A stretch of 64,000 nucleotides of DNA from assembly GCA_965644265.1 (NCBI GenBank), contig OZ286471.1, positions 49,414,001-49,478,000 on the forward strand, read 5' to 3'. Source of the DNA: Glycera tridactyla (Eukaryota). Of this stretch, positions 25,901 to 62,421 are shown piece after piece. The notes beneath the pieces were generated by a model. It had not been told where the DNA came from, searched no databases, and saw only the letters and a program-made list of their open reading frames with translations. A program made the translations under genes and the position numbers. Position 1 is the stretch's first letter. Each line of letters begins with the position of its first letter.

Positions 25901-28900
25901 CCATGAGCAAGTTAAATGCTGATGTACTCACTGTGATAGGTGTCACATTGGTTGATGTTCGTTAACCATGAGATTTAACTTTGTTCCAAAGCCTATTGTA
26001 TTCAAATCCTTGCCACTACAGTATCCATCATGTAACAGAAGTTTTCAGAACTTATGCCAAGCAGAGATATCGAGTCCTCAGCTGATGCCATGAGCAGGAT
26101 ATTTAAAAAAACAAAACATGCATTAATCGTAAAAATACTAAGATACCTATTGCTTAGGGCAAGTTTCTGCTCAGTAAATCTTTTCATTTGTGTCTGTCCT
26201 AATTTTGCTCTTTTGTTCATGTTATTTCTGACAGAGCTCATTCAGCAAGACAGATGGGACCAGACCAAGTCATGAAGAATTCATGGAGGCATTATCTAAA
26301 CTTGATGCCATCCTGATTCGTGCAACATACCACACCCTCATGGCTGATGCCATGCTGCGAGATGTATCATTGGACACCGCCATAGAGCGTAATACTGGAC
26401 AACCACAGGCCAACATGGTTGAGAAGTGTACCTGCCCTACCGGATATTCAGGTCTCTCTTGTGAGGTATGCACTATGTTGATCTATTTGAAGATATTTGT
26501 ACTAGCCTTTCTGTCAAGACTCTCCTTGGTCATGTGAGAAAAATGTGGGGAGGTGATATACACATGTACTGTAAAACTACCATGGAAATCAATACAGGTA
26601 AGCACTTTGAAGCCATCATGATTTAATCTCTTGAGATAGTTAGTCATGGGTTGCATGTATATTTGCAAAGGTAGGATTGCTAATCAGTAATGTGCAATGT
26701 TGGCTTTCTGATGGTAATCACTTCATAATGTTTGTTTGCCCAGACTCTAATGCATAATCCCAGAAAATGTATGCAATGAGAGACACCTTAAATGTCACCT
26801 AAAAGTGGTCTCAAAAGAGGTGGTCTCTTGTTGGGCGTATATTTGACTATGTTGAACAGAAGAGCTACCCTGCAGAAGCTGTCTCCCATCAAATGTGGTC
26901 TCCCATGGGGGGGTGTCTCTCATAACTGAATTCTCTGAAATTGATCTGAATACTCAAATGATGAAATGAGAGCAACCTTCATTGCCAATACATTTTGTCT
27001 GGAACATCTTTTCGTTTGATCAGCAGTAGTAATAGAATCGATGGTGATATCTACCGATTTCAAGCTGTTGAATCTCTTTCCTTTCCTCAGATCATATTGA
27101 TGTGTGTAGTAATATGAATCGATTTGTTGTAGGAGTGTGCCCCTGGTTACACCCTCAGTTCAAGTGGCACCTGCACACAAGGAGGTAAGTGATGGCCTTA
27201 AATTCTATACATTCAGCTCCCAGTTCTCTATTTTACACTCTATTGCTCACTTTGTATTTGTAAGTGTGTATGCACATGTCTTTGTGTGTTTTTAGAAGTA
27301 ATAATATGGGAGCTCCTGATTCTGCACTTTCTTTTTCAGAAAAAAGGTGGGACAAATCTTCTAGGCCCATGCAAACTCACTTTCCTGATCCAATTACAAC
27401 AATAAGTATAAATATAAGTAAGACCTCTATTTGCACATCGGGAGAAGATTATAGTAATGCCTAAGCATATGCAGATAAGATTTTATCTGTGTGATGCATA
27501 CCACTTTGTTTCAATTAGTGGTTGAATCACATGCTTTTTCTTCTTTCAAGAACTATCGGGTAAAGTAACCTATTCATTTACTTTAAGTATCACAAGTATT
27601 AACATCTGCGGGTTGTGACATCTTTCAGTTAGAATATCTTCATATACTATAGATGAAGCTCTTCTGAATTTCTAACATCTCATAGATATCAAGCATGATG
27701 TTTCAAGCTCGGACATACAGCCTGCTTACAAATTGGAAACTGAAAGCCATCATAGAGATTGGCCTCTCCTTATGGCTATATGCTGTGGAGTGTTTTGATC
27801 AGAGGTTAAATGAGCTCTTTTGATAATCTCGTGTTCATAGACTGAAAACAAGCATTCACATCTCTTTACTATTTAAGACATAAAATGTATCTTGTCGTTG
27901 ATATCTGGACAAAATGTCATGATTGGTAGATCAGAGTGAATGTGATATTTGAATGATAGCTGGTACCGTTGACTCTATTCAGATGGTACTGGCTCACCAT
28001 CCTCTACTGAAATTCCTTCAACAACTGTGGAACTACCAACACCGTGTGCACCTCATGAGTATGAGTGTCAAAATAGTTTATGCATTCCTGCTGAACTTGT
28101 ATGTGACCTCCATGATCACTGTGGTGACAATTCTGATGAGCTAGATTGCGAGGAGCAAGAGGAGGAGGAGGGTGAGCGATCTATTTAAGGATCGCTTTGC
28201 TGTAGGAATTCCCCCAGGATATACATAAATATACATCTGTATTGTCTCCTGTCCTTCCGCTCTTGCCTGTCCCATAACTACCATTCCAATCTCATTAGTA
28301 TGAAGTTGGCATTTATCCTGGCATATAAGTCAACCTGTTGAATAAGTCAACCCCCTGATTTCACCTTGCAAAGTATGGATTCTGCTAAATTCTTGCATTT
28401 AAGATGACCCTGATATTCTTGTAAGATTTGGCATGGCAAGTCATGATCAGCAATAAGATCCATCAAATCCCTTTTGCCTGCATACTCCGATAAAACTTGT
28501 CACGAGTGACCCCCTGACTAGCTACCATCTCTGGCATTTTCCTGTGTCTTGCAGACTAGGGCAATGCCATCAACATTTGTGACATTGGCTTTTCTCAGGG
28601 TTTGATGAAGCTCAGGATGGTGACCTACCCAAGGATGTTTGTGTCTACTAGATAATTTCATGATGTTCTTGGAGAAAATGTCTTGATTCTCTCAAAGATG
28701 ATTATGAACCATTCAAGTGAAATTGATACATTTGTTTGCATTGGCACTATTCATCAATCCTCGTTTGTATTTTGACATTTGGAGGTATATGATGATTGGT
28801 GGATTTCATTGATAGTCAATCTCACATTTATGTCCAGCCTTTCATTTTTGGCTCATATTCTGGTCTGAGATATACAATAAGATAAACCATCTGTATGGTA

Positions 28901-31900
28901 TTCTATTCATTGACAGTTAAAAAAACGTATCCCGGCAGTAATCAAACGTCTTGTCCTAGGTGTTCATGTGCCCTTTGTAGATTGTCATATGACTTATTTA
29001 ATAAGACTTCATGCTTTTTGACATGTACACAAGGAGCTCCTTCCTATTTTCACCTTTCCATGGCCTCATTGCAATGTATCTCAGTTGAAACTCCATTTCA
29101 TGCCAATATTTAAGGTTTGGCCCATGCCTACACCTCATATTAAATCTCAATCCATGATTTATTTTTTCATCTTGCATATTATTACCTCACATAAATTTCC
29201 TCTTGAGTAGATTCCAACTATTGCTTCTCAAATCCAGTATGTTGAACTGCTTTGTTTCTCTCCCTCAACTTATTTTGAATCTTTTCCACCACTGGATGAT
29301 TGCTGATTGTCCATTGTGTGAAGATGTTCTCCAGGTCCTTGTTTTGTATGCATTCAGTGTATTGATATCTCAGGCTCCCTCATGTTTGTTACAAAATCCC
29401 AATCATTTGAGAGACTTAATAATGATGAGACATTTTCAGAATTTGGCTGATGAGTTTTATTGCAGGCATAGCACTGTTAGCTTTGGGAATTTGATGCCAG
29501 GGTCTGAGTGATTTGAATAATTTGGAAGTGAGACATCATTGATAAACTGGCTTACAACAAGAAACAAGCTGTCCTGTAAGAAAAATGTTCCTTGCACAGT
29601 ATTTTTCTGTTATATATGCCTTTCTAGTAAGTTTAATACCAAAAACAGAATAAAGTCTAATGACGTAAGAAGTTCACATATAAGAATTAAGTCTGTTCCT
29701 CCCATGTTCATGGCTGACAAGATTGTTCAGGATATGAAATGGATCCAGAACACTCCATGTATACTCACAAGTTATTGAACCTCCACAGTTTTACTCATGT
29801 ATTGATGACTCACATTGCTTTTTTTCATTCTACTGTTTTTATAGTGAGTAAGCACAGCATCCCATCAAGGATGATTTTATTTGTTCCTTGAATATACTTT
29901 CACCACAACACATGACTGAGAAAAACAGATCTTTCCATTGAAACAATGAATACATATACTTTCCTCTCTGAAAATCCTAGCCAGTTGACTAGAGCTATAT
30001 ATGTAATATAAAATTTGATGCCTGTTTGATTATTCCAATTTCCGACTATGTCAATGGAGTAATTTCTTATATTGGATTTTTTTAAGAGTAATTAGTGGAT
30101 TGCTGTGTCTTCTTTTTCTATATAGTCATTTCATTCACCATTCATTTCATTTGTTGAGACAAAGAATTGCCTCTCTCAAGAATGTGAAAATATCCTCATT
30201 TCATGTATTTACCACCCATATGTCTGATGTTGCCTATATTGAGTTCGATAAATGTTGCCTATCATTTGGTATAATAATTGATTCTGAATGAGGTCATGCT
30301 GTCATTGGGTAATCTTGTTTGTTGTATATCCTTCCCTTTTCTAGGACCAACAGAACCACCAGCACAGTGTCTGTATTACCAGTATCGATGTGATAATGGG
30401 CTCTGTATTGACGCCCGTGTGGTTTGTAATTCATACGATGATTGCGGAGATGGCTCAGATGAAAAACGATGCGGTGAGCATCCTAGTCAAGGCTGCACAC
30501 TTTGCATCCAGAATATAAACTCTATGTCAGCTGGAACTGTGATGAGAAGAAAAGACCACCCTAATTTCTCCAATATGTGACAACTCGTAACAAGTATGAG
30601 TTCATGGTATTATATTTCTCTCCTAAATTGGATTCACTAGCTTGTGTATCCATCCATTTCCGGTTGAACACCAATCCTGCAATTTCAGCTAAATTTTTAC
30701 TACCACTCTACTCACATGGATGCCATTCCTGGAGATGTAGCAATGCTCACGCATCCTATGTAGAATATGGTTTTCTCTGAACCGCAGGCACATGCCGAAA
30801 GCATCTCACAACTGCTTTCACCAACAAGTAGTCCCTAAGTAAAACCAGTGACTTCTGTGAATTGTCGTAATTTGGCTAACTCTCATTTCTTTTGACAGCC
30901 ATGTTGCTCTCCATGACTTTGTATTCAATCTGATCCTAACTTATTTGATGTATCACATTGATGAAAACATGGATAAAAACCAAGATGAGTAATTGGCATC
31001 TATGAGCTGCAAGAATTCTCGATATCTATCTTTGACTGAAGTAGATAATCACGCCGAGTTGAAGTGCCTGCACTAGATCCAGATGTCCCAATTTCACAGC
31101 ACTCAAATTCACTATTCTGGTAGAAATGACTGCCCTGCATTCTCTGCCATTTATCTCCAGTTTGTCAGTCACATTGGGCTAATTAGGTGGGTCTTTGACA
31201 TGATCACAATCTTTGCTGACAGAAGTTAGCTCTAACCTAGTCAAGTTCTCACTACCATTGATTTCTTTCTTTTCCATGATCTCCTTAATCAAGGCTCACA
31301 CTCAGGCATCAACAGATTTCTCTGTATCTATGATGATGATTTTCCATTTGAGATTGTTATATGGTTGCATCTTCCTCTCTGAAGGCTAATGCAGGTGCTG
31401 GAACTGTAACTACACTCACCACATCCTCAATATCTTCATTGGTATTGCTGAACAATAATATTGTCAAATGTCAGAAAGACATTGTATTTTCATGTTGGAG
31501 CATTTTCCTATCTGAATTGGAAGTCAATGGTCGACATGTCGCTCATATTGACTGTTTTTAGCAGTGATCAATGATCTTAAAGAAGAATGGAATTTCCATC
31601 CAAATTCATGTGCTCTCTTTGCTCATGCACCGGCACATCTATTCAGCTGTATGCAACCTACATACTCATGTCAGCTACATGTATGTGGTTTAAATCTTTC
31701 CAACACGATGATCAACATCAGCACTTGTAAAAAGAGGGAGGTGAACTATATATTATCTTGGTAGTGATTTATTCTCACTTATTGACTGATACCCGTCTCT
31801 TATTCTCTTCTGACTGCTCAAGAATTTTTCATTATCTGATTTTTTCATCTGTATTGAAGATTCAAACCGGCATTTCAAATTCATCATCCCTTTTATTCTT

Positions 31901-52900: not shown

Positions 52901-53229
52901 TGTGGAAAATCCATTTGTGGGATTATATTCCCAACGTCATCGCAATATAGTGATACAAAATCACATCACTGATACAAGTGCACTCTACAAATACCTGTCT
53001 ATCCTATTTATCACTTGTTATACTCCTGCCCAAACAAAGTTTGGAAGGGGGTTCAGAAAAAAAGAGGTTTTTGGATCTGTGTGTTTGGTTGTATGTAACT
53101 TTGTAATTCTTTGAGACGTCCAAAATGGACAACAATCGGTAAGGTGTAAGGACTCTCACACCCCCTTGGCTTTCTTTCAATGTTATGTGAGATTCTTTGG
53201 TAATAGACAATGCCTTCCCATTGCACACA

Positions 53230-53266
<37 letters not shown>

Positions 53267-56200
53267 CCCCCTCACTCACACGCATGCACACACATAGTCA
53301 AACCTGCCAGAGAGACTGCCTCTCTATGAAGGTCACCCTGAGCTGCGACTGTGATAGTATTTTCACCGGTGAATGCCACCTGTCTATGAAGGCCACTTTT
53401 TGGTGTGACCAAAGGTAGTCTTATCACAGATTGGTCTGCACCTTGGCCATATTGCGTACATTCCTAGTGTCAATATGGCGACAGGCATATTTTCAGTCAC
53501 ATCTGACAAAGCTGTAGTTTCCTCAGCAAATACATGCAGGCATGGCATGGGTACACAAATCCTTTGAAAAGATGGCAAATCAGAAGCCCTACACTGAATG
53601 GGACTGCATTTAAACAGACTGGAATCATCAGTTGTATCACACTCCAGTCTACATAATGTAAACAAATGGAATGAATAGGGTATACAAGATGAGTGCAACA
53701 TTCAATGAAATTCATCCATTTCTGCTGAATGTATGAACATCCTCACTAGTGAATTGGATGATAATACTCGGTGGAGAGATTGGTCAAATGTGTATCATCA
53801 ATGGTAGCATAAGTCTGAGCTCCATCTTTTAAGTCGCATCCTACTCTTGTGACAGGAGAGCCACCTATTGAACCATCAACACCAGCACCAAGTTGTCAGT
53901 ACTATGAGATGCAGTGTGACAATGGGAACTGTGTTGATGAACGTCGAGCATGTGATGGGCAGGATGACTGTGGAGATGGCAGTGATGAGAGGGGCTGTGG
54001 TGAGCAATGCTTTCCAGGTTCTAGCACCACCAGCAAATATGTTTCATTCACACCCTTGAAAATCGAAAAAATATGATCNNNNNNNNNNNNNNNNNNNNNN
54101 NNNNNNNNNNNNNNNNNNNNNNNNNNNNNNNNNNNNNNNNNNNNNNNNNNNNNNNNNNNNNNNNNNNNNNNNNNNNNNNNNNNNNNNNNNNNNNNNNNNN
54201 NNNNNNNNNNNNNNNNNNNNNNNNNNNNNNNNNNNNNNNNNNNNNNNNNNNNNNNNNNNNNNNNNNNNNNNNNNNNNNNNNNNNNNNNNNNNNNNNNNNN
54301 NNNNNNNNNNNNNNNNTATACGTGCTCTACACATGATGGAATGCTATTAGACTTATCTGTAAACCAAAGTCATTCAATTCACTAACTCATGAAGAACTAA
54401 ATTTCTCAATCAATAGTCCTCAGCGATATCCCAGATTTGCAGAATCTGGTATTTAAATGAAATATCATATTTTGCCTTCATGAAACAATGGTGAAAATTT
54501 ATATTGTATCAGATGGAGAGCCAACAGAAGGGCCACAATGTCAGTACTATGAGATGAGATGTGATAATGGATTTTGTATCGATGAGCGTCGAAAATGTGA
54601 TGGAAGTGATGACTGTGGTGATGGCAGCGATGAACAGGACTGCCGTAAGCAATACTAGTTAAGACTGATGTATCTGAATCTGGAATCTTTTGTTTAGATG
54701 ATTGGTGTAAGCAACATTCAGAGAAAGTTAGTATTTGCGAACAAGAAATTCGAATACGCAATAGATCAGTCTACTCTGTGTGAAATATATGTTAGCCAGT
54801 AGATTCCTCTTCTTACTAAACAGGCAAGCTGATTTCCATGAAATATGAATAAATTACTATATTTTGGCTTTTTTTTTCATTCATACTGTTTCCTCAAAGA
54901 AATTTTATTTTTGATGAAGCATTCAAAGCAGATCATAATTGTTCAATATCCACCCATTATTTCACCTATCTGGTGGTACGGGGGCAGACGAATCACTGCG
55001 TAAGGGTTCTAATCATGGTTTTCGCTAAGTAGGTGTCCTTGATATGGGACAAGTGATGACCACAAAAACCCAACAGTCACAAAAGCTGATTGCAACTTGA
55101 GGCATGGGCTCAATTCTGACATGAGATAGAGAGAAAGCCCATATCCTTTTCGTGCAAACCCAGAATAAGACACACAAAATGGGATTATGAATTGAGTTTG
55201 TCAAAGTTGATGTCAGGAGAGACAAGGTTTGGCCAGGATTGACCATTTTGCTATGCACAGTGTCAGGGTTTTCATGCTCCTTGCTTGTTCCGCATTAGAA
55301 CCCATATGTATTGATTCACCTGCCAATGGACAGATGGGAATGATGGGTAGGAATTAAGCTAGTAGAAACTATTCAGTGCTATTGTGAGAACTGCAAGGCT
55401 TTCCACTACTAAGAGCTGAATCAAAACATGCTACATGTGAATTTAAATCCTGATGAGAACAATTATCACACCGCATAATGCTCATATCATGATGTGGATG
55501 TACTATACATACCAGCTGGACGAACCACTCCAACACCAACAGTTGAATGTGAATGGTATGAGGTACCATGTAACAATGGGAAATGCATCGACAGCCGACA
55601 AGAATGTGATGGAAACGATGATTGTGGTGATGGCACAGATGAGAGCAACTGTGGTGAGCAGCAATCAATTGTTACTATCAGTCAAGTAAAAATGCAAACA
55701 CTCATTACCTTTCTTAAACTGAGCTGCTTCATGCTGCCTTGAATCTCTTGAGAGACTCAGGTATGTAAATGACTATCAATAGCAGTTATTGCTGAAAAAT
55801 GTCTACGAACTTTCTATTTGGAGATAAAAAAAATGCATACAACATACCATAAAAGCACTATGACTATCAATGATTGTATTTATGAGTGATGGAAGTGCTG
55901 ACAAGGTATAGTGGTGAAAACATACTCTGATTGGCTGTCAGGTCATGGGCATCATTTTTGGGAGATGCCAAACTTTGTAATGGTCTCACATTGCATCACT
56001 ATTATGAAGAAAACCACTATGAATTTGCCAGAAGTTCACTCCATCATTATAATCAATACATTTTTTTAAAACAAAACAGACTCATTTTATACACCCATGA
56101 GATATCAAATCTCTGCTGATGTCGATCCTCATGATTGATGCCAATCCTCGTATCATCGTTCTGCTCCAAAATGATATATGTCAATTATGGATATTTCTGA

Positions 56201-59200
56201 CTGATATCCCTTTACTTTGAGATTTCATATGGCATGGTGATTCATCATAAGATTCATATAAACCACATGAAATACCAATTATTTCTATGATACGTCAGCA
56301 CTTCAGAGCTTTAGATTTTCTGAGAGTTGGGTGGACCCATGTGGCCCATGAACTGGAAATACGGGTCATAACTAAAGATTGATGAGCCAACCATTGTTAA
56401 TCATTGGTTAATGGAGACAAAATTGCTGGGCCAGTGGACCCATAGTAGGAGATATTGATGGGTTGAAAGGGCAAAAACGTGCTGACCAACAATCTGAAGC
56501 TCTTCTCATTTATTAAGATGCAAGACACTTTTTTGGCCTATACAGCTCAATCCCATATTTGCTTCATCTCAGATGGCACTCCAACAGAACCAACAACAGA
56601 AAAACCACACATTCACACTTGTGCAAGTGACGAGTTCACCTGCAGCAATGGACGGTGTGTGAATGAACAGCACAGGTGTGACTCGTTTGATGATTGTGGA
56701 GACAATTCTGATGAGCAAGGGTGTGGTAAGCAATCTTATGCTTAACATCAATCGAATAATTGCCCAGCAATTAAGGATCCCTCTCCTGCATGCTGTGTGA
56801 GCATATGGAATAGAATAAGAAAAAGCCACATTCACATTCATGATCTTGGACTTGAACTTGAATAACTTCTTGAATCTGACATTAGTACTTATGGAGAAGT
56901 TTCAGAATCCTTCCTGGCTCCTGAAGCATAGATGATATTTTTTAGTGGAACATTACTGCAGAGACTTACTCAAACCTGCCATGCTGATCGGAGATATACA
57001 ATGTTTTACAGAAAGTCAAAAGATATGCAGAAAGTAATATGATGCGATCTCCTGCAGTAGACCATTGATGTTCAAGCTGAGAGCCTTTTGTCTACTGGCG
57101 AATTCTATCGTTGCTGTCTGTCTTGACTCAACCATCTGATTGAATGCCTAAAGGCATCCATTGTCCAACCATCAAATTGTTTAAGTGAGACCTCTATCAT
57201 GTAATATGCCCAACAGCATTCAGCCATGGCCATATGCATTTGGTAGTGCAATCATCAAGATTTTTGAGAATTACTTCAGAATTGATGGTTTGCTCTGGAA
57301 TGAACATGGAAGAATCAATCTATCCTATAAAAGCAAAAAGTTTGATAAGCCATTGGATTTTGTGACATTGGAAATTGAAGTATTCTTTTGAGCCACAGTA
57401 TTCTGTTATACCTCAACTCTTCAAATGTGTCTGAAATTTCCATTACAGAGTGGAGATACTTTTATTGCTTTCTTAGATAAGAATTTATGTGTGATACTAG
57501 CATGCCTTACAGACATTAATTTTGCTGGATGAAGGAGATATGATATGTTAATTGATCCATTACATTCACTTGCATGGTTATTTACATTGGTACACCTATC
57601 TCTGGTAAAGGTAATACCATTATCCCATCTATGTACGATGGAGTGATGGACCATAATATAAGCCAAGAAATATTGGATTTCTTATATGGATCCTTAATAG
57701 TTAAGCACACATTGAAGTTAGAACACATATTATATTTAAGACACAGATCTGCCACCAACTTCACTGCTAAATCTTATCTATAGTTACTTGTGTGTGACCA
57801 GTAGGATATTCTAGGATGATTATTGTATACCAATTGTTTGCTGGACACTTTGTACTTGTCAGGGCATGCCAAGTCTAAGTATGGAAGTCACCTATTTCAT
57901 CCTGCCACAGATACTTTCTGTACTGATTTTTTTGACATCTGTGTTGACGAGGATACTGTGCAAGTTCAATGCAGCACCACCATTCATAGTTGCATGTTTT
58001 CAATTGAGCTCCTATCAAGTCGGTTCACATCATATCTACAGGCTCGAATAGTTGGTTTGTGATCACAGTGATGTATTCATGAACAATATATTTGTGAAAC
58101 ATTGTGTAGTGTCATATAGGTTGAATTTCTGTGAGATAGGAATCGGTGACATGCATTTCCTTCTTTCTTACTAGTAGGTGAGCCTACAACGTCAGTGCAT
58201 CCAAGTAGCCACTGTCCTTTCTACCAGTTTCGGTGTAACAGTGGCGTATGTGTAGATGAGCATCTAAGATGTAACAATCATATAGACTGCCCGGATGGTT
58301 CAGATGAAAAAGATTGTGGTGAGCTGGATGTTTTCAGCATCCCTCTGCCAAATGCTGCTCAATTCATGCATGATGTTGCATGTTCAAGCTATCTCACTGC
58401 TTGACAGCATATCTTTCCAAATGACTAAATCATCACAGTCTTGTTGTGTTATCAGTGCAGCTGAACCTCCAGTCCATGTCCCCCTGCCCTTCTAATTTGG
58501 ATATGATACTAGTTAGAGGTTCGATGTTGATAATATGATGGAATCTCTGTTTATCAAATTTACAAAGACAAGACCAGTTAAACATAATCCATCAATTCTA
58601 TTGCAAAATCAACGGACAATATGGCATGCACCAGCTCTAATTAGCTGAATAAGGCTGTATGTTGGCTAAAATATATAGGAACCATCAGGACCCATGGTGT
58701 ATATTTTTGGTAGCAAGTGCCAAATGTTGGTAGCCTATAAGAAATTGTCAATTACAGCTCTCATAATTTATGGGGCCACTGGCTACTAAAGTAGCAATTT
58801 AGAGCCCCGCTGAATGCAGATCATCTCCCCCATATTTTGCATATGGTTTCTTTTGAAGAATACCAGTGATGTACGAATGTTCCTGCAGACCTATTCGGTT
58901 TCTTGATCACTGATCCCACTACCTGAATCGATCACGTACCCGTGCTATGTATCTGAATGTTCAGATTCTCATTGTCAGCATCTCACCGATCTGCGTCAAC
59001 CTGACTGCCATCTCATCGTTACCCTCCCATCTCAAAGCTGCTGTCAGAATTTTGCCAGATTTTTTTGCTTCTAGCAATAAGTCAAGCCAAGCAATTCAAG
59101 TTATATATGTCATGGCGTGGTTGGATGAGGTCGTCAGTGATGATACATAGAATGGTTGCTTTCATGTGAACTTATTCACTTTGTGTTCAATCTAAGTAGG

Positions 59201-61501
59201 TTTTCTGTATGATTGACTTTTTGAGTGTGAATGAATGTGATTTGAGAGAGACAGATGAGTGTGTGTGTGTACGCATGTGTGTGCCTGCATGCGAGCATCC
59301 ATGCGTGTGTTGTGTATGATGGATATGATGAGTATTTTGAGATGCCAATTGTTTTCCATGGTATTCCATTGCTGAAGTTTAACACAGAGTCAAACATGCT
59401 CATGAGACCACCTCTCTAAGAAGAGCAACCTGAGCCGGAATGTGATGATGTTTGCAACAGTAAATTACCTCTCCATAAAAGCCACTTGCCTACAATGACT
59501 GCTTTTTATGCAACTGAAAGTGGCCTTTATGGACAGGTTTGACTGTAATGCCAAACTTAGGTATTTAAGCTTAACCTGACAGTACAGGATCCTTCTTGAC
59601 ATAGGAATTGAAACATTGTCATGGTGTTCAGTGATTTATCTACAAATCAAACAGATATAATGAGTCCCACAATAAAATCAATGAGTCCCGGTGTTACGCA
59701 AACAAAATCCTGACATTGACAGGTATGTCTGTATGCTTTAGTTACAGATGTACTGAGGTAGTAGTTATTGACAGAATGCAGTGACAGTTTTAAGGCCAAT
59801 CATAACAGAGAAAATTATATTGAGAACTAGGCCTGTGATGTGGGGGGATATTTGGCAGCTGGTGTAGTGGTCAGATTCGGATGCATCCACTATCAAAATA
59901 AACGCTTCCAGTGGGATGCAGGTGCTATGAGAGCAATGAGTCCAGGCAGGCTGAGATGAGTCTGAGACTCGGGATGCAGGTGTAGATAAATCACTGCGGT
60001 GTTACTATATAGCAAGAAACCATGGGTTGTTGGCCTGACAAGTTATACACCATTAGTTATGGTGTATAAGTGGGATAATCAATAGAAACATAACAGGTAG
60101 AGTATAACTGTTATGTCAATACCTCATGTTTCTCGCCTGTATACCATGAATTTTCATCTAAATAATGATGAAATTGCTGGGAAAAGGACAATCGTGCATA
60201 TCGTCCATGCCACATCACCAGGGGCCATCTCACTGGTTTTCATTTTTCAGGATGATCTACACTCACATATCACTGTATGTGAATGACATTTCCATGCTTG
60301 TTTTTCATGCAAATGATTCAGGCTGAGTCATGTCAAGAGAAGATGATATATCTTAATTTTTCATCTCATTTAAGCATCTATATTAGAGTCCTAAGAAAGA
60401 TAAACCTGACAAAAGCAGTGAAATTATGTGACTTTTTTGCATATTGGGAGTTGTCCGTCAGGCATGTAAATGAAATGCCACCAGTGACAACGCGGAGAGA
60501 ACTGGGATAGTCACGCTATTCTACATGCGATTCACGCTCCCCCTCTGAATATTCATGGGAATAGTGGCATCTGCCTCCTGACTGCTCAAATACAGGAGGA
60601 AGTGAGAGCTGGGTGGCGCCAAGATTGACGTCGGTAGTAGAAAAGACAAGGGCGAGTCTTGTGACTGTGCATTATGATGTAGACATGTGCTAATGGTCAC
60701 TTATATTCCACACCCGTATATTCAAGGCATACTAGCACTGATTGTGGTTTATTAGTTTATTTGGATCATTGTTTGGTGGAATCTTTTCATCAAAGTGATC
60801 ATGAGATTGTGATATGGAATTGAATTGATATTCTGTTGCAGCGTAGCAGAAATGCTTTCCCCATAATTTTTTCACACATCATGGAGGTGTTTGGCGAATG
60901 TTTTCTCGGTCTGTTGAACTGAACACCCTGCTGGTCTCAAATGACCCATCATATCTCAAGGTGCCATGAAGATATTTGTGGATGACCAGGGGTGTTAGGG
61001 GTCCGCATGATGATGGACAGTTGTAGAAGTGCCTGCCAGCACGGATTTAATGCCATCCTCATAAGTGAGCATGTGAAACACCAGAATTCATACAAATGTC
61101 AGACAAAGTTTACCTCATTTATCAGCTACCAAAATAGTCTTTGTAACCTTTGCAAAGGAAAAATTGATGTTTCTCGATGAAATGTTGAAATCAAGGACGA
61201 TGCATGAATGCCCTTTTTGCCAGTTTTAATACTCTTCATGGGTACATATTGACTGTGTACGAGGTGAGATATGAGATGAGATCAGATGATTATGTCTATT
61301 GAGGTGTAGTCTCATTTGATGACCTGTCAGTTTGTGCTTCATTTGCAGTAACTGAAACCCCTGGCGGAGTGACAGATGCACCATCACATGCGACATGTCA
61401 GAGTGATGAGTTCACTTGTGATAATGGCATATGCATAGATAAGTCACTTTACTGTGATGGCAAGGTACATTGTGGGGATGGTTCTGATGAGCGAGACTGT
61501 G
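342..61501 (+). CDS. HSPG2: Perlecan / basement-membrane heparan sulfate proteoglycan core protein, partial multi-exon gene (5' and 3' ends outside window)
   Basis: Manually spliced domain order Ig-LDLa x3-Ig-(LE/L4) x3, the perlecan domain II-III architecture. It is followed in compatible phase by an LDLa cassette array. Membership of the array in the same gene is inferred from phase continuity; no terminal exon was recognised in between. Confidence 0.88.
967..1101 (+). CDS. HSPG2: Exon: LDLa (domain II)
   Basis: cag|...|gtgagt, 135 nt; [44 protein letters not shown]. Confidence 0.92.
1533..1652 (+). CDS. HSPG2: Exon: LDLa (domain II)
   Basis: 120 nt; [39 protein letters not shown]. Confidence 0.93.
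2196..2327 (+). CDS. HSPG2: Exon: LDLa (domain II)
   Basis: 132 nt; [43 protein letters not shown]. Confidence 0.93.
2765..2929 (+). CDS. HSPG2: Exon: Ig domain N-terminal half
   Basis: 165 nt; [54 protein letters not shown]. Confidence 0.93.
3661..3783 (+). CDS. HSPG2: Exon: Ig domain C-terminal half
   Basis: 123 nt; [40 protein letters not shown]. Confidence 0.92.
4174..4298 (+). CDS. HSPG2: Exon: laminin-EGF first part (domain III-1)
   Basis: [41 protein letters not shown]. Confidence 0.9.
4907..5086 (+). CDS. HSPG2: Exon: laminin IV (L4-1)
   Basis: 180 nt; [16 protein letters not shown]...[14 protein letters not shown]. Confidence 0.88.
5153..5525 (+). mobile_element. Helentron/DINE-like non-autonomous element
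   Basis: TTTTTAT-polyC...GGGGGGCATACTGG followed by a (CTGTCCGT) microsatellite and a short 3' palindrome, a layout typical of HINE/DINE-1 elements; boundaries approximate. Confidence 0.5.
5621..5691. repeat. (TG)n microsatellite
   Basis: Direct read. Confidence 0.97.
5838..5924 (+). CDS. HSPG2: Exon: L4-1
   Basis: 87 nt; [29 protein letters not shown]. Confidence 0.88.
6002..6495. mobile_element. Tc1/mariner-type MITE family A, copy 1 (494 bp)
   Basis: TA TSD, about 30-bp imperfect TIR CAGTCG..CGCC..TTTTT.TGTGGCA; homologous to 37543-38036. Confidence 0.82.
6881..6964 (+). CDS. HSPG2: Exon: L4-1
   Basis: 84 nt; [28 protein letters not shown]. Confidence 0.86.
7666..7802 (+). CDS. HSPG2: Exon: L4-1 (contains RGD)
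   Basis: 137 nt; [45 protein letters not shown]. Confidence 0.9.
8213..8251. repeat. (ACCA)n microsatellite
   Basis: Direct read. Confidence 0.93.
8422..8533 (+). CDS. HSPG2: Exon: L4-1 end / LE
   Basis: 112 nt; [37 protein letters not shown]. Confidence 0.92.
9157..9270 (+). CDS. HSPG2: Exon: laminin-EGF
   Basis: 114 nt; [38 protein letters not shown]. Confidence 0.93.
9733..9875. mobile_element. 143-bp foldback MITE
   Basis: Perfect 19-bp IR ATTGGGCCCATTCGACTGG/CCAGTCGAATGGGCCCAAT plus internal 13-bp IR CTTCACGAAAAAT/ATTTTTCGTGAAG; superfamily unclear. Confidence 0.75.
9994..10121 (+). CDS. HSPG2: Exon: laminin-EGF
   Basis: 128 nt; [42 protein letters not shown]. Confidence 0.93.
10930..11069. 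mobile_element. MITE family B-like copy
   Basis: TA|CAGTGAACCTGTC ... GGTGGTCTC ... GCAGATTCGACTT|TA (degenerate). Confidence 0.6.
11125..11270 (+). CDS. HSPG2: Exon: laminin-EGF
   Basis: 146 nt; [48 protein letters not shown]. Confidence 0.93.
12390..12481 (+). CDS. HSPG2: Exon: laminin-EGF
   Basis: 92 nt; [30 protein letters not shown]. Confidence 0.9.
13275..13415 (+). CDS. HSPG2: Exon: laminin-EGF
   Basis: 141 nt; [47 protein letters not shown]. Confidence 0.92.
13562..13731. mobile_element. MITE family B-like copy
   Basis: TA|CAGTGAAACCTG ... AGATTTCATTG|TA. Confidence 0.62.
13918..13990. repeat. (GT)n microsatellite
   Basis: Direct read. Confidence 0.97.
14068..14247 (+). CDS. HSPG2: Exon: L4-2
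   Basis: 180 nt; [15 protein letters not shown]...[15 protein letters not shown]. Confidence 0.92.
15095..15187 (+). CDS. HSPG2: Exon: L4-2
   Basis: 93 nt; [31 protein letters not shown]. Confidence 0.92.
15655..15738 (+). CDS. HSPG2: Exon: L4-2
   Basis: 84 nt; [28 protein letters not shown]. Confidence 0.88.
16195..16313 (+). CDS. HSPG2: Exon: L4-2
   Basis: 119 nt; [39 protein letters not shown]. Confidence 0.93.
17059..17170 (+). CDS. HSPG2: Exon: L4-2 end / LE
   Basis: 112 nt; [37 protein letters not shown]. Confidence 0.93.
17548..17724. mobile_element. Short MITE family B (CAGT.AAACCTGT TIR, TA TSD)
   Basis: TA|CAGTAAAACCTGTCTATAGTG ... CACTATAGCAGGTTTTACTG|TA. Confidence 0.8.
17879..17992 (+). 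CDS. HSPG2: Exon: laminin-EGF
   Basis: 114 nt; [38 protein letters not shown]. Confidence 0.94.
18602..18729 (+). CDS. HSPG2: Exon: laminin-EGF
   Basis: 128 nt; [42 protein letters not shown]. Confidence 0.93.
19247..19333 (+). CDS. HSPG2: Exon: laminin-EGF
   Basis: 87 nt; [28 protein letters not shown]. Confidence 0.92.
19769..19857 (+). CDS. HSPG2: Exon: laminin-EGF plus linker
   Basis: 89 nt; [29 protein letters not shown], donor gtcagt. Confidence 0.88.
20221..20396. mobile_element. MITE family B-like copy; 3' part tandemly duplicated
   Basis: TA|CAGTCAAACCTGTC ... GACAGGTTTCACT. Confidence 0.7.
20311..20617. repeat. Two-copy 154-bp tandem duplication
   Basis: ATGTCAATAGAGAAGAGCCG...GATGTACATCTCAATTT.ATGGTCATG repeated from 20311 and 20465. 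Confidence 0.88.
20720..20805 (+). CDS. HSPG2: Exon: laminin-EGF
   Basis: 86 nt; [28 protein letters not shown]. Confidence 0.9.
21098..21213 (-). repeat. Dispersed repeat, inverted relative to the copy near 36909-37005
   Basis: Shared GTCAAGATTC.TTCAA.CTTGGCTGGGC..CCAGGTCTCC.TCCTTC core; boundaries approximate. Confidence 0.65.
21463..21603 (+). CDS. HSPG2: Exon: laminin-EGF
   Basis: 141 nt; [47 protein letters not shown]. Confidence 0.93.
22225..22410 (+). CDS. HSPG2: Exon: L4-3
   Basis: 186 nt; [15 protein letters not shown]...[13 protein letters not shown]. Confidence 0.9.
22429..24342. mobile_element. Non-autonomous piggyBac-like element, 1914 bp
   Basis: TTAA TSD (22425-22428, 24343-24346); perfect 14-bp TIR CCCTTTACTGCATA; subterminal GTGCATGAAA repeats at both ends; no transposase ORF. 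Confidence 0.85.
24771..24866 (+). CDS. HSPG2: Exon: L4-3
   Basis: 96 nt; [32 protein letters not shown]. Confidence 0.92.
25385..25468 (+). CDS. HSPG2: Exon: L4-3
   Basis: 84 nt; [28 protein letters not shown] (same size and phase as paralogous exons in repeats 1 and 2). Confidence 0.82.
26235..26465 (+). CDS. HSPG2: Exon: L4-3 end / LE
   Basis: 231 nt; [32 protein letters not shown]...[16 protein letters not shown]. Confidence 0.93.
27133..27184 (+). CDS. HSPG2: Exon: short LE-closing exon, ends in phase 1
   Basis: tag|...|gtaagt, 52 nt; [17 protein letters not shown]. Confidence 0.85.
27983..28171 (+). CDS. HSPG2: Array cassette A1: T/P linker + LDLa + acidic tail
   Basis: 189 nt, phase 1-1; [62 protein letters not shown]. 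Confidence 0.87.
28172..28196 (+). promoter_or_regulatory. Putative 5' splice-site stem-loop of A1
   Basis: gtg AGCGATC tatttaag GATCGCT. Confidence 0.5.
30345..30473 (+). CDS. HSPG2: Array cassette A2: LDLa
   Basis: 129 nt; [42 protein letters not shown]. Confidence 0.87.
30474..30500 (+). promoter_or_regulatory. Putative 5' splice-site stem-loop of A2
   Basis: GTG a GCA t CCT agtca AGG c TGC a CAC. Confidence 0.5.
33388..33597 (+). CDS. HSPG2: Array cassette A3: long linker + LDLa
   Basis: 210 nt; [69 protein letters not shown]. Confidence 0.87.
34959..35099 (+). CDS. HSPG2: Array cassette A4: LDLa
   Basis: 141 nt; [46 protein letters not shown]. Confidence 0.88.
36524..36649 (+). CDS. 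HSPG2: Array cassette A5: LDLa
   Basis: 126 nt; [41 protein letters not shown]. Confidence 0.88.
36909..37005 (+). repeat. Dispersed repeat, partner of 21098-21213
   Basis: Same core in the opposite orientation. Confidence 0.65.
37543..38036. mobile_element. MITE family A, copy 2 (494 bp)
   Basis: Same TIRs, TA flanks and internal sequence (TTGTTTATTGCCGTGAC...GTCAGAAC.GTCACGTA) as 6002-6495. Confidence 0.8.
39784..39918 (+). CDS. HSPG2: Array cassette A6: LDLa (AAG acceptor)
   Basis: 135 nt; [44 protein letters not shown]; 5' boundary less certain. Confidence 0.82.
42168..42287 (+). CDS. HSPG2: Array cassette A7: LDLa
   Basis: 120 nt; [39 protein letters not shown]. Confidence 0.87.
42768..43193. 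repeat. Minisatellite, about 62-bp unit, about 7 copies
   Basis: Unit TGAGCTGT.C.AGTGCATCAAGTGAAGG.ATATTGGTGGTGCAGATAGTCATTTGTCCACTG. Confidence 0.9.
43198..43286 (+). pseudogene. Dead LDLa cassette (pseudo-exon) cut by a TTAA element
   Basis: ctag|tg ttt aca tgt...: [28 protein letters not shown]. Aligns to CxYYExxC..C..D..DC with Cys3 replaced by Ser (agt); stop TAA lies in the TTAA insertion site; possible remnant (EYVDC) after 45603. Confidence 0.68.
43910..45471 (+). mobile_element. 5'-truncated non-LTR retrotransposon (CR1/L2-like LINE)
   Basis: Stop-free RT frame ([10 protein letters not shown]...[19 protein letters not shown]...LFADDT...KYLGIILD), a 3' UTR with AATAAA and an (AAATC)n tail; ATCTCTT at both junctions. 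Confidence 0.9.
43926..44978 (+). CDS. LINE reverse transcriptase, C-terminal fragment
   Basis: 350-aa ORF with RT motifs PQG and FADD; the ATG is internal to a truncated frame. Confidence 0.88.
   Translation: MSRYGANANCVKWFTSYLKDRMCTVKVNGVTSGERGIACGVPQGSILGPLLFSIYVNDFTHYMRGPSVNLFADDTAILVSDRTPERLQGKLENALSIASKWLNRNKLSLNIKKTQVMVFGSRQQVRRCKLNVTLNDVNINQTKTFKYLGIILDETLSFADHAEYIRAKTAGRVSVLGRLRGVLSKETSLMLYRTLILPVFDYCDIVYDSLGMVAASKLQKVQNKAFRIVTKSERYTRTSQIHSELHMPFLDCRRQYHTLIHVNKILNGSLPVQYTPLCTYIEPIHSYSTRLNEKPYVNAVRPMLRIAEGSFAYRGGKLWNEYVSQPDGFESTVPKLFKEKLKSFIHFSNM
46673..46819 (+). CDS. HSPG2: Array cassette A8: LDLa (core type)
   Basis: 147 nt; [48 protein letters not shown]. Confidence 0.89.
46820..46850 (+). 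promoter_or_regulatory. Putative 5' splice-site stem-loop of A8
   Basis: g TGAG CAAC ACT agtta AGT t GTTG gt CTCA. Confidence 0.55.
47589..47720 (+). CDS. HSPG2: Array cassette A9: LDLa
   Basis: 132 nt; [43 protein letters not shown]. Confidence 0.89.
48321..48467 (+). CDS. HSPG2: Array cassette A10: LDLa
   Basis: 147 nt; [48 protein letters not shown]. Confidence 0.89.
49289..49435 (+). CDS. HSPG2: Array cassette A11: LDLa
   Basis: 147 nt; [48 protein letters not shown]. Confidence 0.89.
50762..50908 (+). CDS. HSPG2: Array cassette A12: LDLa
   Basis: 147 nt; [48 protein letters not shown]. Confidence 0.89.
51044..51177. other. Assembly gap (N) inside the array
   Basis: Run of N. Confidence 0.99.
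51684..51830 (+). CDS. HSPG2: Array cassette A13: LDLa
   Basis: 147 nt; [48 protein letters not shown]. Confidence 0.89.
52688..52852 (+). CDS. HSPG2: Array cassette A14: LDLa
   Basis: 165 nt; [54 protein letters not shown]. Confidence 0.89.
53224..53263. repeat. (CA)n microsatellite
   Basis: Direct read. Confidence 0.93.
53856..53999 (+). CDS. HSPG2: Array cassette A15: LDLa
   Basis: 144 nt; [47 protein letters not shown]. Confidence 0.89.
54079..54316. other. Assembly gap (N) inside the array
   Basis: Run of N. Confidence 0.99.
54513..54644 (+). CDS. HSPG2: Array cassette A16: LDLa
   Basis: 132 nt; [43 protein letters not shown]. Confidence 0.89.
55516..55653 (+). CDS. HSPG2: Array cassette A17: LDLa
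   Basis: 138 nt; [45 protein letters not shown]. Confidence 0.88.
56573..56725 (+). CDS. HSPG2: Array cassette A18: LDLa
   Basis: 153 nt; [50 protein letters not shown]. Confidence 0.88.
58175..58318 (+). CDS. HSPG2: Array cassette A19: LDLa (TAGTAG tandem acceptor; alternative start 58178)
   Basis: 144/141 nt; [47 protein letters not shown]. Confidence 0.87.
59387..59545. mobile_element. MITE family B-like copy
   Basis: Degenerate GAGTCAAACATG ... GACAGGTTTGACTG|TA. Confidence 0.6.
61349..61501 (+). CDS. HSPG2: Array cassette A20: LDLa
   Basis: 153 nt; [50 protein letters not shown]. Confidence 0.88.
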
Positions 61502-61525
61502 GTAAGCGATCTTAGTTAAGATCGC
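61502..61525 (+). promoter_or_regulatory. Putative 5' splice-site stem-loop of A20
   Basis: gtaaGCGATCTT agtt AAGATCGC: perfect 8-bp stem containing TAGTTAAG. Function is inferred. Confidence 0.6.
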
Positions 61526-62300
61526 ACCCAACATGATTCCACAACCTAGTTAAGAATAAATGATTCCTAGATAAGATTCTTCAGGGATCATCAGTGAACA
61601 GATGAATGATAGTATAATTTCTCTGTCTTAGTATTTCCCCATCTGACTGATGGTATCATGACCCTACCACTTGATTATATTCTGTATTCATTCCTCTCAT
61701 ACACCCATTCATCAGTAATTTATTTAATCAAAATCTTATATGTGAATACTATAGCTCAGAGAAAATTTGCTCTCACCTTAACTCTATAAGAATTATAGCT
61801 CATGGGGCACAATATATATCCTTCCCACCCAGCTTTCATATCTAGATCAATGTAAGTTCTTGGATCTGGACACGATGTTTACTCAAAATGTAGTGTTATT
61901 TCTCTTCTGTGATATTACAATCATTATCTTAGTCACAGTATCTAAGATGGTCAATCTCTATCATACATTGAGATTGATACATGAGAAAAATGTATTCTGG
62001 TATCATGCCCAGTCCAGTCACATGGAGCCTCGAAGCCTGCCCAGAGACATGAGAAATGAATCACATGAAAAATGAAAAATGTTGGAATACATTGACCCTG
62101 TAATATTTGGTATTCTCATCAGAATCAAGACATGTTGTTCATCATAGATGCCATCAGTGGCCTGCTTGTATCCCTGTTTTGAAGGGAATTCTTCCTGTGT
62201 GATTCAATAATAACATTCTTCAGTGGCTATAAGCAACCCCACTAAAATTACCTCAGCATTGATGAGGATTCACTTCATGAATAATTGAAATTTCACACAG

Positions 62301-62421
62301 GGATTCCTGAAACTGATGTGCCACCGGTGGATACAGATAAACCACCTATTGTCACCAATGTTCCTCCCACCATCACTCATGAACCATCACTCCGGTGTGG
62401 GCCGTTGGAGTTCCAGTGTCA
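62301..62421 (+). pseudogene. Array cassette A21, 5' part only, interrupted after LDLa Cys2
   Basis: cag|gg att cct...: IPETDVPPVDTDKPPIVTNVPPTITHEPSLRCGPLEFQC, then foreign sequence starting TGTAAC; in-frame stop at 62438-62440. Confidence 0.72.

What the first reader, a model, noticed from the sequence alone, without database searches (positions are those of the whole stretch)
28172..61507. Array donors systematically lack +6T (GTRAGC)
Seen by manual count: 18/20 cassette donors are GTRAGC, A7 is GTAAGA, A9 is GTGAGG, and none has T at +6. Among the 33 upstream donors, 28 have +6T. The bias includes the deeply diverged cassettes A1, A3, A18, A19 and A20. Established: +6U pairs with U1 snRNA, and weaker donors are typical of regulated exons. 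Inference: selection keeps these donors weak, or keeps the C that starts the stem.
Basis: partly seen in the sequence, partly recalled or inferred. Interest (0 to 1): 0.72.

Follow-up and report, generated by a model that had tools for sequence, protein, structure and literature searches.

The report
Conserved +6C splice donors, LDLa array
In a giant perlecan-like gene of a non-human animal, the splice donors of a run of LDL-receptor-type repeat exons carry a C where this genome's donors normally carry a T; this C is kept by selection and comes with a short hairpin or a fixed motif just downstream, which suggests built-in control of which repeats enter the protein.

Summary
The count is correct. 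Of the 20 single-exon LDLa cassettes, 18 have GTRAGC donors, A7 has GTAAGA, A9 has GTGAGG, and none has +6T. LDLa exons of other genes give 16 T, 4 A and 1 C of 21.

Shared ancestry alone does not explain this. Third codon positions among the old cassettes are saturated, yet +6 evolves at about 0.2 times the exon rate. In simulations, the chance that 18 of 20 tips keep C is 0.007 to 0.0004. Two metagenome contigs, most simply from a related species, keep both GTGAGC and the downstream motif.

"Kept weak" is not supported: U1 duplex energy and PWM score match the gene's other donors. "C in a stem" holds for about a third. A perfect stem of at least 6 bp covers +6 in 10 of 32 +6C donors (1.9 expected) and in 0 of 24 +6T donors. 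A TAGTYAAG motif near +12 follows 19 donors, none with +6T.

The gene extends beyond the window, about 220 kb with at least 70 LDLa cassettes.

Most likely this is a control module abutting the 5' splice site that tunes cassette inclusion. Splicing itself is untested. The scan holds notes on this same stretch, none on other DNA.

The parts
27983..28197 (+). A1: LDLa cassette exon 27983-28171 (acceptor inferred), donor GTGAGC at 28172, 7-bp hairpin pairing +4..+10 with +20..+26, motif variant TATTTAAG at +11
   Evidence: fold z -2.35; stem test
30345..30500 (+). A2: exon 30345-30473, donor GTGAGC at 30474, TAGTCAAG at +11, imperfect stem that includes +6
   Evidence: +6 pairing beats 97% of shuffles
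33388..33630 (+). A3: exon 33388-33597, donor GTGAGC at 33598, bulged stem over the donor
34959..35150 (+). A4: exon 34959-35099, donor GTAAGC at 35100, 6-bp stem from +5 pairing with +46
36524..36655 (+). A5: exon 36524-36649, donor GTAAGC at 36650, no motif or clear stem
39784..39924 (+). A6: exon 39784-39918, donor GTAAGC at 39919, no motif or clear stem
42168..42330 (+). A7: exon 42168-42287, donor GTAAGA at 42288. The +6A opens a 6-bp stem (ATATCG/CGATAT), so +6 pairs with T. Motif copies at +24 and +35
46673..46845 (+). A8: exon 46673-46819, donor GTGAGC at 46820, TAGTTAAG at +12 flanked by a CAACA/TGTTG stem
47589..47740 (+). A9: exon 47589-47720, donor GTGAGG at 47721, TAGTTAAG at +12
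48321..48487 (+). A10: exon 48321-48467, donor GTGAGC at 48468, decayed motif
49289..49455 (+). A11: exon 49289-49435, donor GTGAGC at 49436, TAGTTAAG at +12
50762..50946 (+). A12: exon 50762-50908, donor GTGAGC at 50909, TAGTTAAG at +12 and +30. The assembly gap starts 135 nt further on
51684..51850 (+). A13: exon 51684-51830, donor GTGAGC at 51831, motif with one mismatch (TCGTTAAG)
52688..52898 (+). A14: exon 52688-52852, donor GTGAGC at 52853, TAGTTAAG at +12, TAGTCAAG at +28, 6-bp stem AGCAAT/ATTGCT
53856..54005 (+). A15: exon 53856-53999, donor GTGAGC at 54000, no motif. The assembly gap starts 79 nt further on
54513..54664 (+). A16: exon 54513-54644, donor GTAAGC at 54645 (-1 is C), TAGTTAAG at +12
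55516..55659 (+). A17: exon 55516-55653, donor GTGAGC at 55654
56573..56746 (+). A18: exon 56573-56725, donor GTAAGC at 56726, 6-bp stem TAAGCA/TGCTTA over +2..+7
58175..58355 (+). A19: exon 58175-58318, donor GTGAGC at 58319. The donor is paired in a composite stem, but +6 itself is bulged
61349..61555 (+). A20: exon 61349-61501, donor GTAAGC at 61502, perfect 9+9 palindrome from +5 to +24 with the motif at its apex, second TAGTTAAG at +46. The 24-mer is unique in the genome
   Evidence: fold z -3.38
51044..51177 (.). assembly gap inside the A12-A13 intron; not filled
54079..54316 (.). assembly gap inside the A15-A16 intron; not filled

Best explanation
The +6C is a selectively maintained base, not a leftover of duplication. 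It is the first and most conserved position of a short intronic module that abuts the 5' splice site of a subset of LDLa cassette exons in a very large perlecan-like gene.

The module has two overlapping forms:
- A local hairpin whose 5' arm covers +6 (C6 pairs with G) and buries part or all of the donor.
- A TAGTYAAGR motif starting at about +10 to +13.

In A1 and A20 the two forms coincide in one palindrome.

Inferred mechanism: the C removes the +6 pair with U1 (and with U6), and the hairpin or a motif-binding factor further limits or gates snRNP access. Inclusion of each in-frame (phase 1-1) cassette then becomes tunable rather than automatic.

Shown: the bias, the constraint on +6, the association of +6C with stems and with the motif, and the conservation of both in contigs most simply from a related species.

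Inferred: that the module acts on splicing, and that the cassettes are optional.
For: Bias against controls:
- Array C18, A1, G1, T0. Upstream donors T27 of 33. LDLa exons in other genes T16, A4, C1.

Constraint beyond ancestry:
- Third-codon identity among A1-A7 and A16-A20 is 26-55%, which is saturated.
- The ML rate at +6 is 0.17-0.21 times the exon or third-position rate (2dlnL 7.3-10.4), while +7..+12 evolve at 1x or faster.
- In simulations starting from root C, the chance of at least 18 of 20 C tips is 0.0068 or 0.0004, depending on the tree.
- Among the old cassettes, pairwise identity at +6 is 0.82, against about 0.27 for +7..+30 and 0.51 for the exon.

Not a property of the exon family:
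- Close relatives of the array cassettes elsewhere in the gene have GTGAGT or GTAGGT and no motif (L068, L069, L070, L094).
- C versus non-C needs 17 changes on the tree, and well-supported branches force at least 3.

Cross-species:
- L062 and L063 match the genome at no more than 90%, and only over the exon plus about 20 nt. Both have GTGAGC followed by an exact TAGTTAAG.

Link to the module:
- The motif follows 19 of 70 LDLa donors of the gene: C14, A3, G2, T0 (p = 1.1e-4).
- All 12 exact copies in the window lie on the + strand inside the array, 7 of them at exactly +12.
- A perfect stem of at least 6 bp covers +6 in 10 of 32 +6C donors (1.92 expected), 0 of 24 +6T donors and 3 of 30 non-LDLa donors.
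- In A7 the exceptional +6A pairs with T.
- The L079 and L081 stems bury -3..+10 (z -3.9 and -4.4). A20 has z -3.4 and A1 z -2.35.

Human precedent:
- A +6T>C change makes ELP1 exon 20 variably skipped between tissues (PMC6030917).
Against: - No expression data, so cassette (alternative) status is unproven.
- About a third of +6C donors have neither a stem nor the motif (A5, A6, A10, A15, A17, L065, L067, L091).
- There is no common structural register: RNAalifold finds 0 pairs.
- Mean predicted pairing of +6 across the array is not significantly above shuffles (0.68 against 0.56, p = 0.19).
- Class-level MFE z-scores for +6C and +6T donors do not differ significantly (p = 0.22).
- The donors are not weak by PWM or U1 duplex energy.
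- The 105-nt exon tree is poorly resolved, and the independent-contrast test had only 2 usable pairs.
- The core cassettes A8-A16 are homogenised and count as one lineage.
- It is not proven that the metagenome contigs come from another species.
Confidence: 0.55

Rival explanations
1. Shared ancestry plus gene conversion only. The ancestral cassette happened to carry GTRAGC and its flank, and duplication and homogenisation copied it. On this view +6C has no function.
For: A8-A16 are homogenised: exon identity is 0.88 and the +1..+19 flank is 0.6-1.0 identical, dropping to background at +20. They count as one event. A1 and A20 share much of their flank. The +6 label is clustered on the tree (0 of 500 shuffles as low), which near-copies alone can produce.
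Against: - The old cassettes are saturated at third codon positions and at +7..+30, yet 10 of 11 keep C.
- The rate test and the simulations reject neutrality at +6.
- Close relatives outside the array carry T, so +6 can change.
- In this genome the favoured base at +6 is T, so drift together with ordinary donor selection should have produced T.
Confidence: 0.12
2. Selection acts only against a donor that is too strong or constitutive. Any non-T at +6 would do, and C dominates only because T>C is a transition.
For: With T at +6 these donors would be the strongest class (10.97 bits against 9.34 for the gene's other donors). Across the whole gene, non-T donors include A10 and G4 as well as C32, and the motif also follows A and G donors.
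Against: At saturation, a rule of 'any base but T' predicts a mixture weighted towards A. Instead 12 of 13 independent array lineages hold C. Stems covering +6 are enriched only in the C class. The donors are not weaker than the gene's other donors.
Confidence: 0.13
3. The elements next to the donors are selector sequences of a long-range competing-RNA-structure system of the Dscam type. They would pair with a docking site, or with each other because they are palindromic, to choose among cassettes.
For: A conserved element lies directly downstream of many variable exons of one tandem array. The A1 and A20 elements at the two ends of the window's array are near-identical palindromes that could pair with each other.
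Against: The reverse complement of the motif does not occur anywhere in the window. The element sequences differ too much between cassettes to share one docking partner. Phase 1-1 symmetry allows free combinations and does not require mutual exclusion. Sequence outside the window could not be scanned for a docking site.
Confidence: 0.07

Closest known systems
ELP1/IKBKAP exon 20, IVS20+6T>C (familial dysautonomia)
   Same: A T-to-C change at intron position +6 removes one U1 base pair and, together with regulatory factors, turns an exon into a variably skipped one (PMC6030917, PMC8302731).
   Different: That case is a single pathogenic mutation in an already weak exon. Here the C is the conserved state across dozens of exons, and the donors are otherwise perfect (GTRAG with G at -1) and not weak overall. 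Skipping has not been shown here.
5' splice-site hairpins that regulate cassette exons (tau exon 10 stem-loop; SMN2 exon 7 terminal stem-loop 2)
   Same: A short local stem includes donor nucleotides and would compete with U1 binding (tau: PMC2483273; SMN2: from my own knowledge). A1, A20, A18 and L079-L081 show this anatomy.
   Different: Those are single exons with one conserved structure. Here the stems differ in sequence, register and length between cassettes, and only about a third of +6C donors have one.
Intronic UWAA-rich STAR-protein (T-STAR/Sam68) response elements just downstream of neurexin AS4 exons
   Same: A short A/U-rich motif containing UUAA, sometimes in two copies, lies directly downstream of the donor of an exon that may be optional (PMC3636136, PMC5397175).
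   Different: The resemblance is recalled from memory and rests on the UUAA core only. No binding protein was tested, and many copies here read UCAAG, which lacks UUAA.
Dscam-type docking/selector arrays
   Same: A tandem array of variable exons, each with a conserved intronic element.
   Different: No docking site was found in the window, the elements sit at the donor itself, and the exons are symmetric and need not be mutually exclusive.
Perlecan (HSPG2 / trol / UNC-52)
   Same: Domain order in the window is Ig, LDLa x3, Ig, then three laminin B / laminin EGF units. The best full-length relative carries SEA, LDLa, Ig, Laminin_B and EGF_laminin domains.
   Different: There are large LDLa expansions both before and after the laminin-like region (at least 70 cassettes over about 220 kb). 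From my own knowledge, vertebrate perlecan does not have this.

Membership tests
Perlecan-like basement-membrane proteoglycan gene | LDLa modules, Ig modules and laminin B / laminin-type EGF units in perlecan order on one strand, with consistent phases | tested here: met
   Pfam hits to Ldl_recept_a, Laminin_B and EGF_laminin on single exons. Collinear tblastn HSPs to perlecan-like proteins P0002, P0003 and P0056. P0056 carries SEA, LDLa, I-set, Laminin_B and EGF_laminin. Phases are continuous from exon 33 into A1.
Perlecan-like basement-membrane proteoglycan gene | N-terminal SEA domain and C-terminal LG/EGF domain V | not tested
Cassette exon regulated by a 5' splice-site hairpin (tau exon 10 type) | A local stem includes donor nucleotides | tested here: inconclusive
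   Met in a subset: 10 of 32 +6C donors have a perfect stem of at least 6 bp covering +6, against 1.92 expected and 0 of 24 +6T donors. z is -3.4 to -4.4 for A20, L079 and L081. Not met as a class property.
Cassette exon regulated by a 5' splice-site hairpin (tau exon 10 type) | The exon is alternatively spliced, and inclusion changes when the stem is weakened or restored | not testable with these tools
   No transcript data and no assay are available.
Weak-donor regulated exon (FD +6T>C type) | A mismatch to U1 at +6 | tested here: met
   All 214 U1 5' ends found have A at position 3 and none has another base there. No array donor has +6T.
Weak-donor regulated exon (FD +6T>C type) | The donor is weak overall compared with constitutive donors | tested here: not met
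   U1 duplex dG is -7.97 against -8.25 kcal/mol (p = 0.5). PWM score is 8.87 against 9.34 bits (p = 0.11).
Dscam-type docking/selector system | One docking site complementary to the selector consensus | tested here: not met
   The reverse complement of the motif occurs 0 times in the window. The rest of the gene was not scanned.
Dscam-type docking/selector system | Mutually exclusive use of the array exons | not testable with these tools
   No transcript data are available.
3'-tailed mirtron | A hairpin starting at the donor with arms of about 22 nt | tested here: not met
   Stems are 6-13 bp long.
Transposon-derived or repeat-derived palindrome | Many copies across the genome | tested here: not met
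   The A20 24-mer is unique in the 2.04-Gb genome with up to 3 mismatches allowed.

The most novel reading that the evidence does not exclude
The +6C, hairpin and TAGTYAAGR module could be a dedicated per-exon gate repeated across 30 or more tandem LDLa cassettes. It would let the cell set the number and identity of LDLa modules in a perlecan-like matrix protein combinatorially. That would be an array-scale splicing code placed at the donor itself, distinct from Dscam-type docking and selector pairing.
Probability: 0.2. Interest if true: 0.8.

Novelty: new variant of a known kind. Interest (0 to 1): 0.56.

Why it matters
If the module gates inclusion, this locus would be a natural, many-times-replicated experiment on how a single donor position together with a splice-site-adjacent hairpin or motif sets exon usage. 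The same exon family supplies matched internal controls that carry +6T and lack the module.

It would also show how an extracellular matrix protein can vary its number of ligand-binding LDLa modules.

The practical payoff is that the hypothesis is directly testable. Thirty-odd +6C cassettes and twenty-odd +6T cassettes lie in one transcript, so one long-read RNA data set would settle it.

Tried and rejected
- **Compensating U1 variant (G at position 3).** I found 214 canonical U1 5' ends and none with another base at position 3. Rejected.
- **Palindrome as a repeat or transposon end.** The A20 24-mer is unique in the genome. Rejected.
- **A common conserved hairpin.** In the fixed register i+j=29, +6 pairs in only 4 of 20 cassettes (read from the columns). 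RNAalifold on 14 flanks gave 0 pairs. There is no shared register.
- **Class-wide structure.**
  - Array MFE z is -0.58, against -0.03 for upstream donors and +0.16 for other-gene LDLa donors; this is borderline (p = 0.054 and 0.017).
  - The 13-lineage t-test gives p = 0.077.
  - Excess pairing of +6 gives p = 0.19.
  - +6C against +6T z-scores give p = 0.22.
- **Phylogenetically independent contrasts** of array position or motif against +6. Only 2 pairs lie on supported branches, so the test is underpowered.
- **Rbfox-type GCATG enrichment near the cassettes.** None: 70 on the sense strand against 61 reverse-complement copies.
- **GTRAGC clusters at 42606-43509.** These belong to a 62-71-bp satellite, not to exons.
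- **Fossil cassettes at about 43200 and 62285-62437.** Neither has a readable donor.
- **Orthologue DNA.**
  - P0003 and P0016 are not on record, the P0056 gene is too long to be returned, and P0001 is over the size limit.
  - The A20 exon search found nothing.
  - The profile search gave only generic LDLa fragments apart from P0151 and P0152.
Small requests passed.
- **U12-type intron at donor 16314 (GTATCC).** The branch-like site is about 37 nt from the acceptor, which is too far from what I know of such introns. Not pursued.
- **How searches were run.** All protein searches used single exons by reference. I built and searched no joined (spliced) model. I took no contig for human.


Full report
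**What the locus is**

The + strand of the window carries part of a perlecan-like gene. In order it holds an Ig exon, three LDLa exons (996-2326), two Ig exons, three laminin B / laminin-EGF units reaching to about 27.2 kb, and then 20 single-exon LDLa cassettes. All 20 cassettes are in phase 1-1 and are multiples of three in length. Each one could therefore be skipped without breaking the reading frame. All protein searches used single exons by reference. I made and searched no joined exon model. Nothing here was taken for human: the gene architecture and the U1 sequence are not those of human, from my own knowledge.

**The gaps**

Both N runs (51044-51177 and 54079-54316) lie inside introns, 135 nt and 79 nt beyond the A12 and A15 donors. 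They touch no exon, donor or flank that I analysed. Because their lengths are only estimates, they may hide collapsed repeat units, so 20 cassettes is a lower bound. I did not fill them.

**The observation**

I annotated the 33 upstream donors from homology and phase, without using +6 as a criterion, and got T27, C4, A1, G1. As a second control, LDLa exons of other genes with the same phase-1 GTRAG donor give T16, A4, C1. The genomic background is therefore about 80% T and about 9% C. The array differs from it with p of about 1e-8 to 1e-9.

**Is it only shared ancestry?**

- A8-A15 are near-copies, with third-position identity of 69-89%, and count as one lineage.
- A1-A7 and A16-A20 are saturated at third positions (26-55% identity). 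That leaves about 13 independent lineages, and 12 of them carry C.
- On the exon tree, +6 evolves at 0.17-0.21 times the exon or third-position rate (2dlnL 7.3-10.4). Positions +7 to +12 evolve at least as fast as the exon.
- In simulations that start from C at the root, at least 18 of 20 tips keep C with probability 0.0068 (all-site branch lengths, the conservative case) or 0.0004 (third-position branch lengths).
- Among the 11 old cassettes, pairwise identity at +6 is 0.82. It is about 0.27 for +7..+30 and 0.51 for the exon itself.

**Evidence from outside the window**

- *Metagenome contigs.* L062 and L063 come from an ENA metagenome. Each carries a core-type cassette that matches this genome at no more than 90%, and only over the exon plus about 20 nt. 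Both have GTGAGC followed by an exact TAGTTAAG at +11 or +12. They group together, apart from the window's core cassettes. The simplest reading is that they come from a related animal.
- *Size of the gene.* A profile of the cassettes finds LDLa exons on the same strand from 78 kb upstream of the window to 78 kb downstream of it.
- *Donors outside the window.* I read the donor of 47 of these exons. They give C14, G3, A9 and T21.
- *Relatives with T.* Close relatives of the array cassettes carry canonical GTGAGT or GTAGGT (L068, L069, L070, L094). So +6C is not a fixed trait of the exon family.
- *Changes on the tree.* On a 72-cassette tree, C versus non-C needs 17 changes, and well-supported branches alone force at least 3.
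- *A positional pattern.* The 27 consecutive detected LDLa donors from A1 to L092 contain no T. A formal independent-contrast test of position against +6 had too few supported pairs to say anything.

**What travels with +6C**

*The motif.*
- A TAGTYAAG-like motif follows 19 of the gene's 70 LDLa donors. Their +6 bases are C14, A3, G2 and T0 (p = 1.1e-4).
- All 12 exact copies in the window lie on the + strand inside the array, 7 of them at exactly +12, and the reverse complement never occurs.
- In the homogenised core, similarity holds from the exon through +19 and falls to background at +20, which is the 3' edge of the motif.

*Hairpins.*
- A perfect Watson-Crick stem of at least 6 bp, with a 5' arm that covers +6, occurs in 10 of 32 +6C donors. 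Shuffles predict 1.92.
- The same kind of stem occurs in 0 of 24 +6T donors (1.77 expected), 2 of 14 +6A/G donors and 3 of 30 non-LDLa donors.
- Counting L079-L081 as one lineage leaves 8 independent cases. By my arithmetic the Poisson p is about 6e-4, and a one-sided Fisher test of C against T gives about 0.002.
- In A7, the one +6A donor of the array, the A opens a stem and pairs with T.
- A20 carries a 9+9 palindrome (z -3.4) and A1 a 7-bp stem (z -2.35). The L079 and L081 stems bury -3 to +10 (z -3.9 and -4.4).

*Limits.* The stems share no register. About a third of +6C donors have neither a stem nor the motif. Class-wide folding statistics are only borderline or null.

**What is not supported**

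The donors are not weak. U1 duplex energy is -7.97 against -8.25 kcal/mol. A PWM built from the gene's own donors scores 8.87 against 9.34 bits. Neither difference is significant. The C costs 1.9 bits, but the rest of each donor is perfect. There is no U1 variant that would pair with +6C: of 214 U1 5' ends found, none has a base other than A at position 3. The A20 palindrome is not a repeat.

**Reading**

+6 is constrained specifically to C. Mere avoidance of T would let A and G accumulate at saturation, and that is not seen. The best-supported account is that C6 is the anchor of a control module abutting the donor, made of a hairpin, the motif, or both. The palindromic A1 and A20 form may be the ancestral state, but this is an inference.

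By analogy with the human +6T>C change that makes ELP1 exon 20 variably skipped (PMC6030917), and with stem-loops at the donors of tau exon 10 (PMC2483273), the module most likely tunes U1/U6 access and so cassette inclusion. UUAA-rich STAR-protein sites just downstream of neurexin AS4 exons (PMC3636136) are a lead for the motif, recalled from memory and untested.

Whether the cassettes are optional at all remains untested. That is the main weakness of the case, and transcript data would settle it.

Noticed in passing
G000:C32:49335418-49556333 (the window is 49414001-49478000): The gene is far larger than the window. At least 70 LDLa cassette exons lie on the + strand over about 220 kb, with LDLa blocks both before and after the laminin-like region. 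One cassette 34 kb upstream of the window (L064) encodes exactly the core-cassette peptide and also has GTGAGC plus TAGTCAAG.
   Followed up: partly
L079, L080, L081 (G000:C32:49353546-49365740): Three related upstream cassettes have GTAAGC donors fully buried (-3..+10) in a 13-bp stem, with MFE -19 to -22 kcal/mol and z about -4. Their closest relatives L078 and L084 have +6T and no such stem.
   Followed up: partly
window 46673-54664: In the homogenised core A8-A16, the exon plus exactly +1..+19 of the intron, and about 10 nt before the acceptor, stay similar (0.88 and about 0.75 identity). The rest of each intron is at background identity (0.28). This looks like conversion or selection with a sharp common edge at +20.
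   Followed up: partly
window 16314: This donor reads GTATCC after AAG, which resembles a U12-type 5' splice site. The only branch-like TTCCTGAT is about 37 nt before the acceptor at 17059, so it is probably an odd U2-type donor.
   Followed up: no
window 42778-43192: A satellite with a 62-71-bp period (about 4 copies, 75-80% matches) lies in the A7-A8 intron. Each unit contains GTGAGC, which inflates naive GTRAGC counts. The region has a strong GC skew (0.18).
   Followed up: partly
window 43905-44975: A 357-codon open frame with a reverse-transcriptase domain (PF00078, E = 1.6e-19), i.e. a LINE-like insertion, lies next to a truncated pseudo-cassette at about 43200-43290.
   Followed up: no
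window 62285-62437: A truncated cassette has a Pro/Thr-rich linker and the first two Cys of an LDLa module, then a stop. No donor follows.
   Followed up: no
window 32243 and 57698: Two exact TAGTTAAG copies lie on the + strand away from any recognisable exon. They may be remains of lost cassettes.
   Followed up: no
G000:C4:77045576-77192541, also C71, C29 and C32:1587289-1603985: U1 snRNA genes lie in long tandem arrays with a period of about 2.1 kb. There are 214 identical 5' ends in the genome.
   Followed up: no
window 58175-58185: Exon A19 begins with TAGGTGAGCC, a donor-like GTGAGC three bases inside the exon. Several core cassettes begin with AGGTGGAGCC, which is also donor-like.
   Followed up: no
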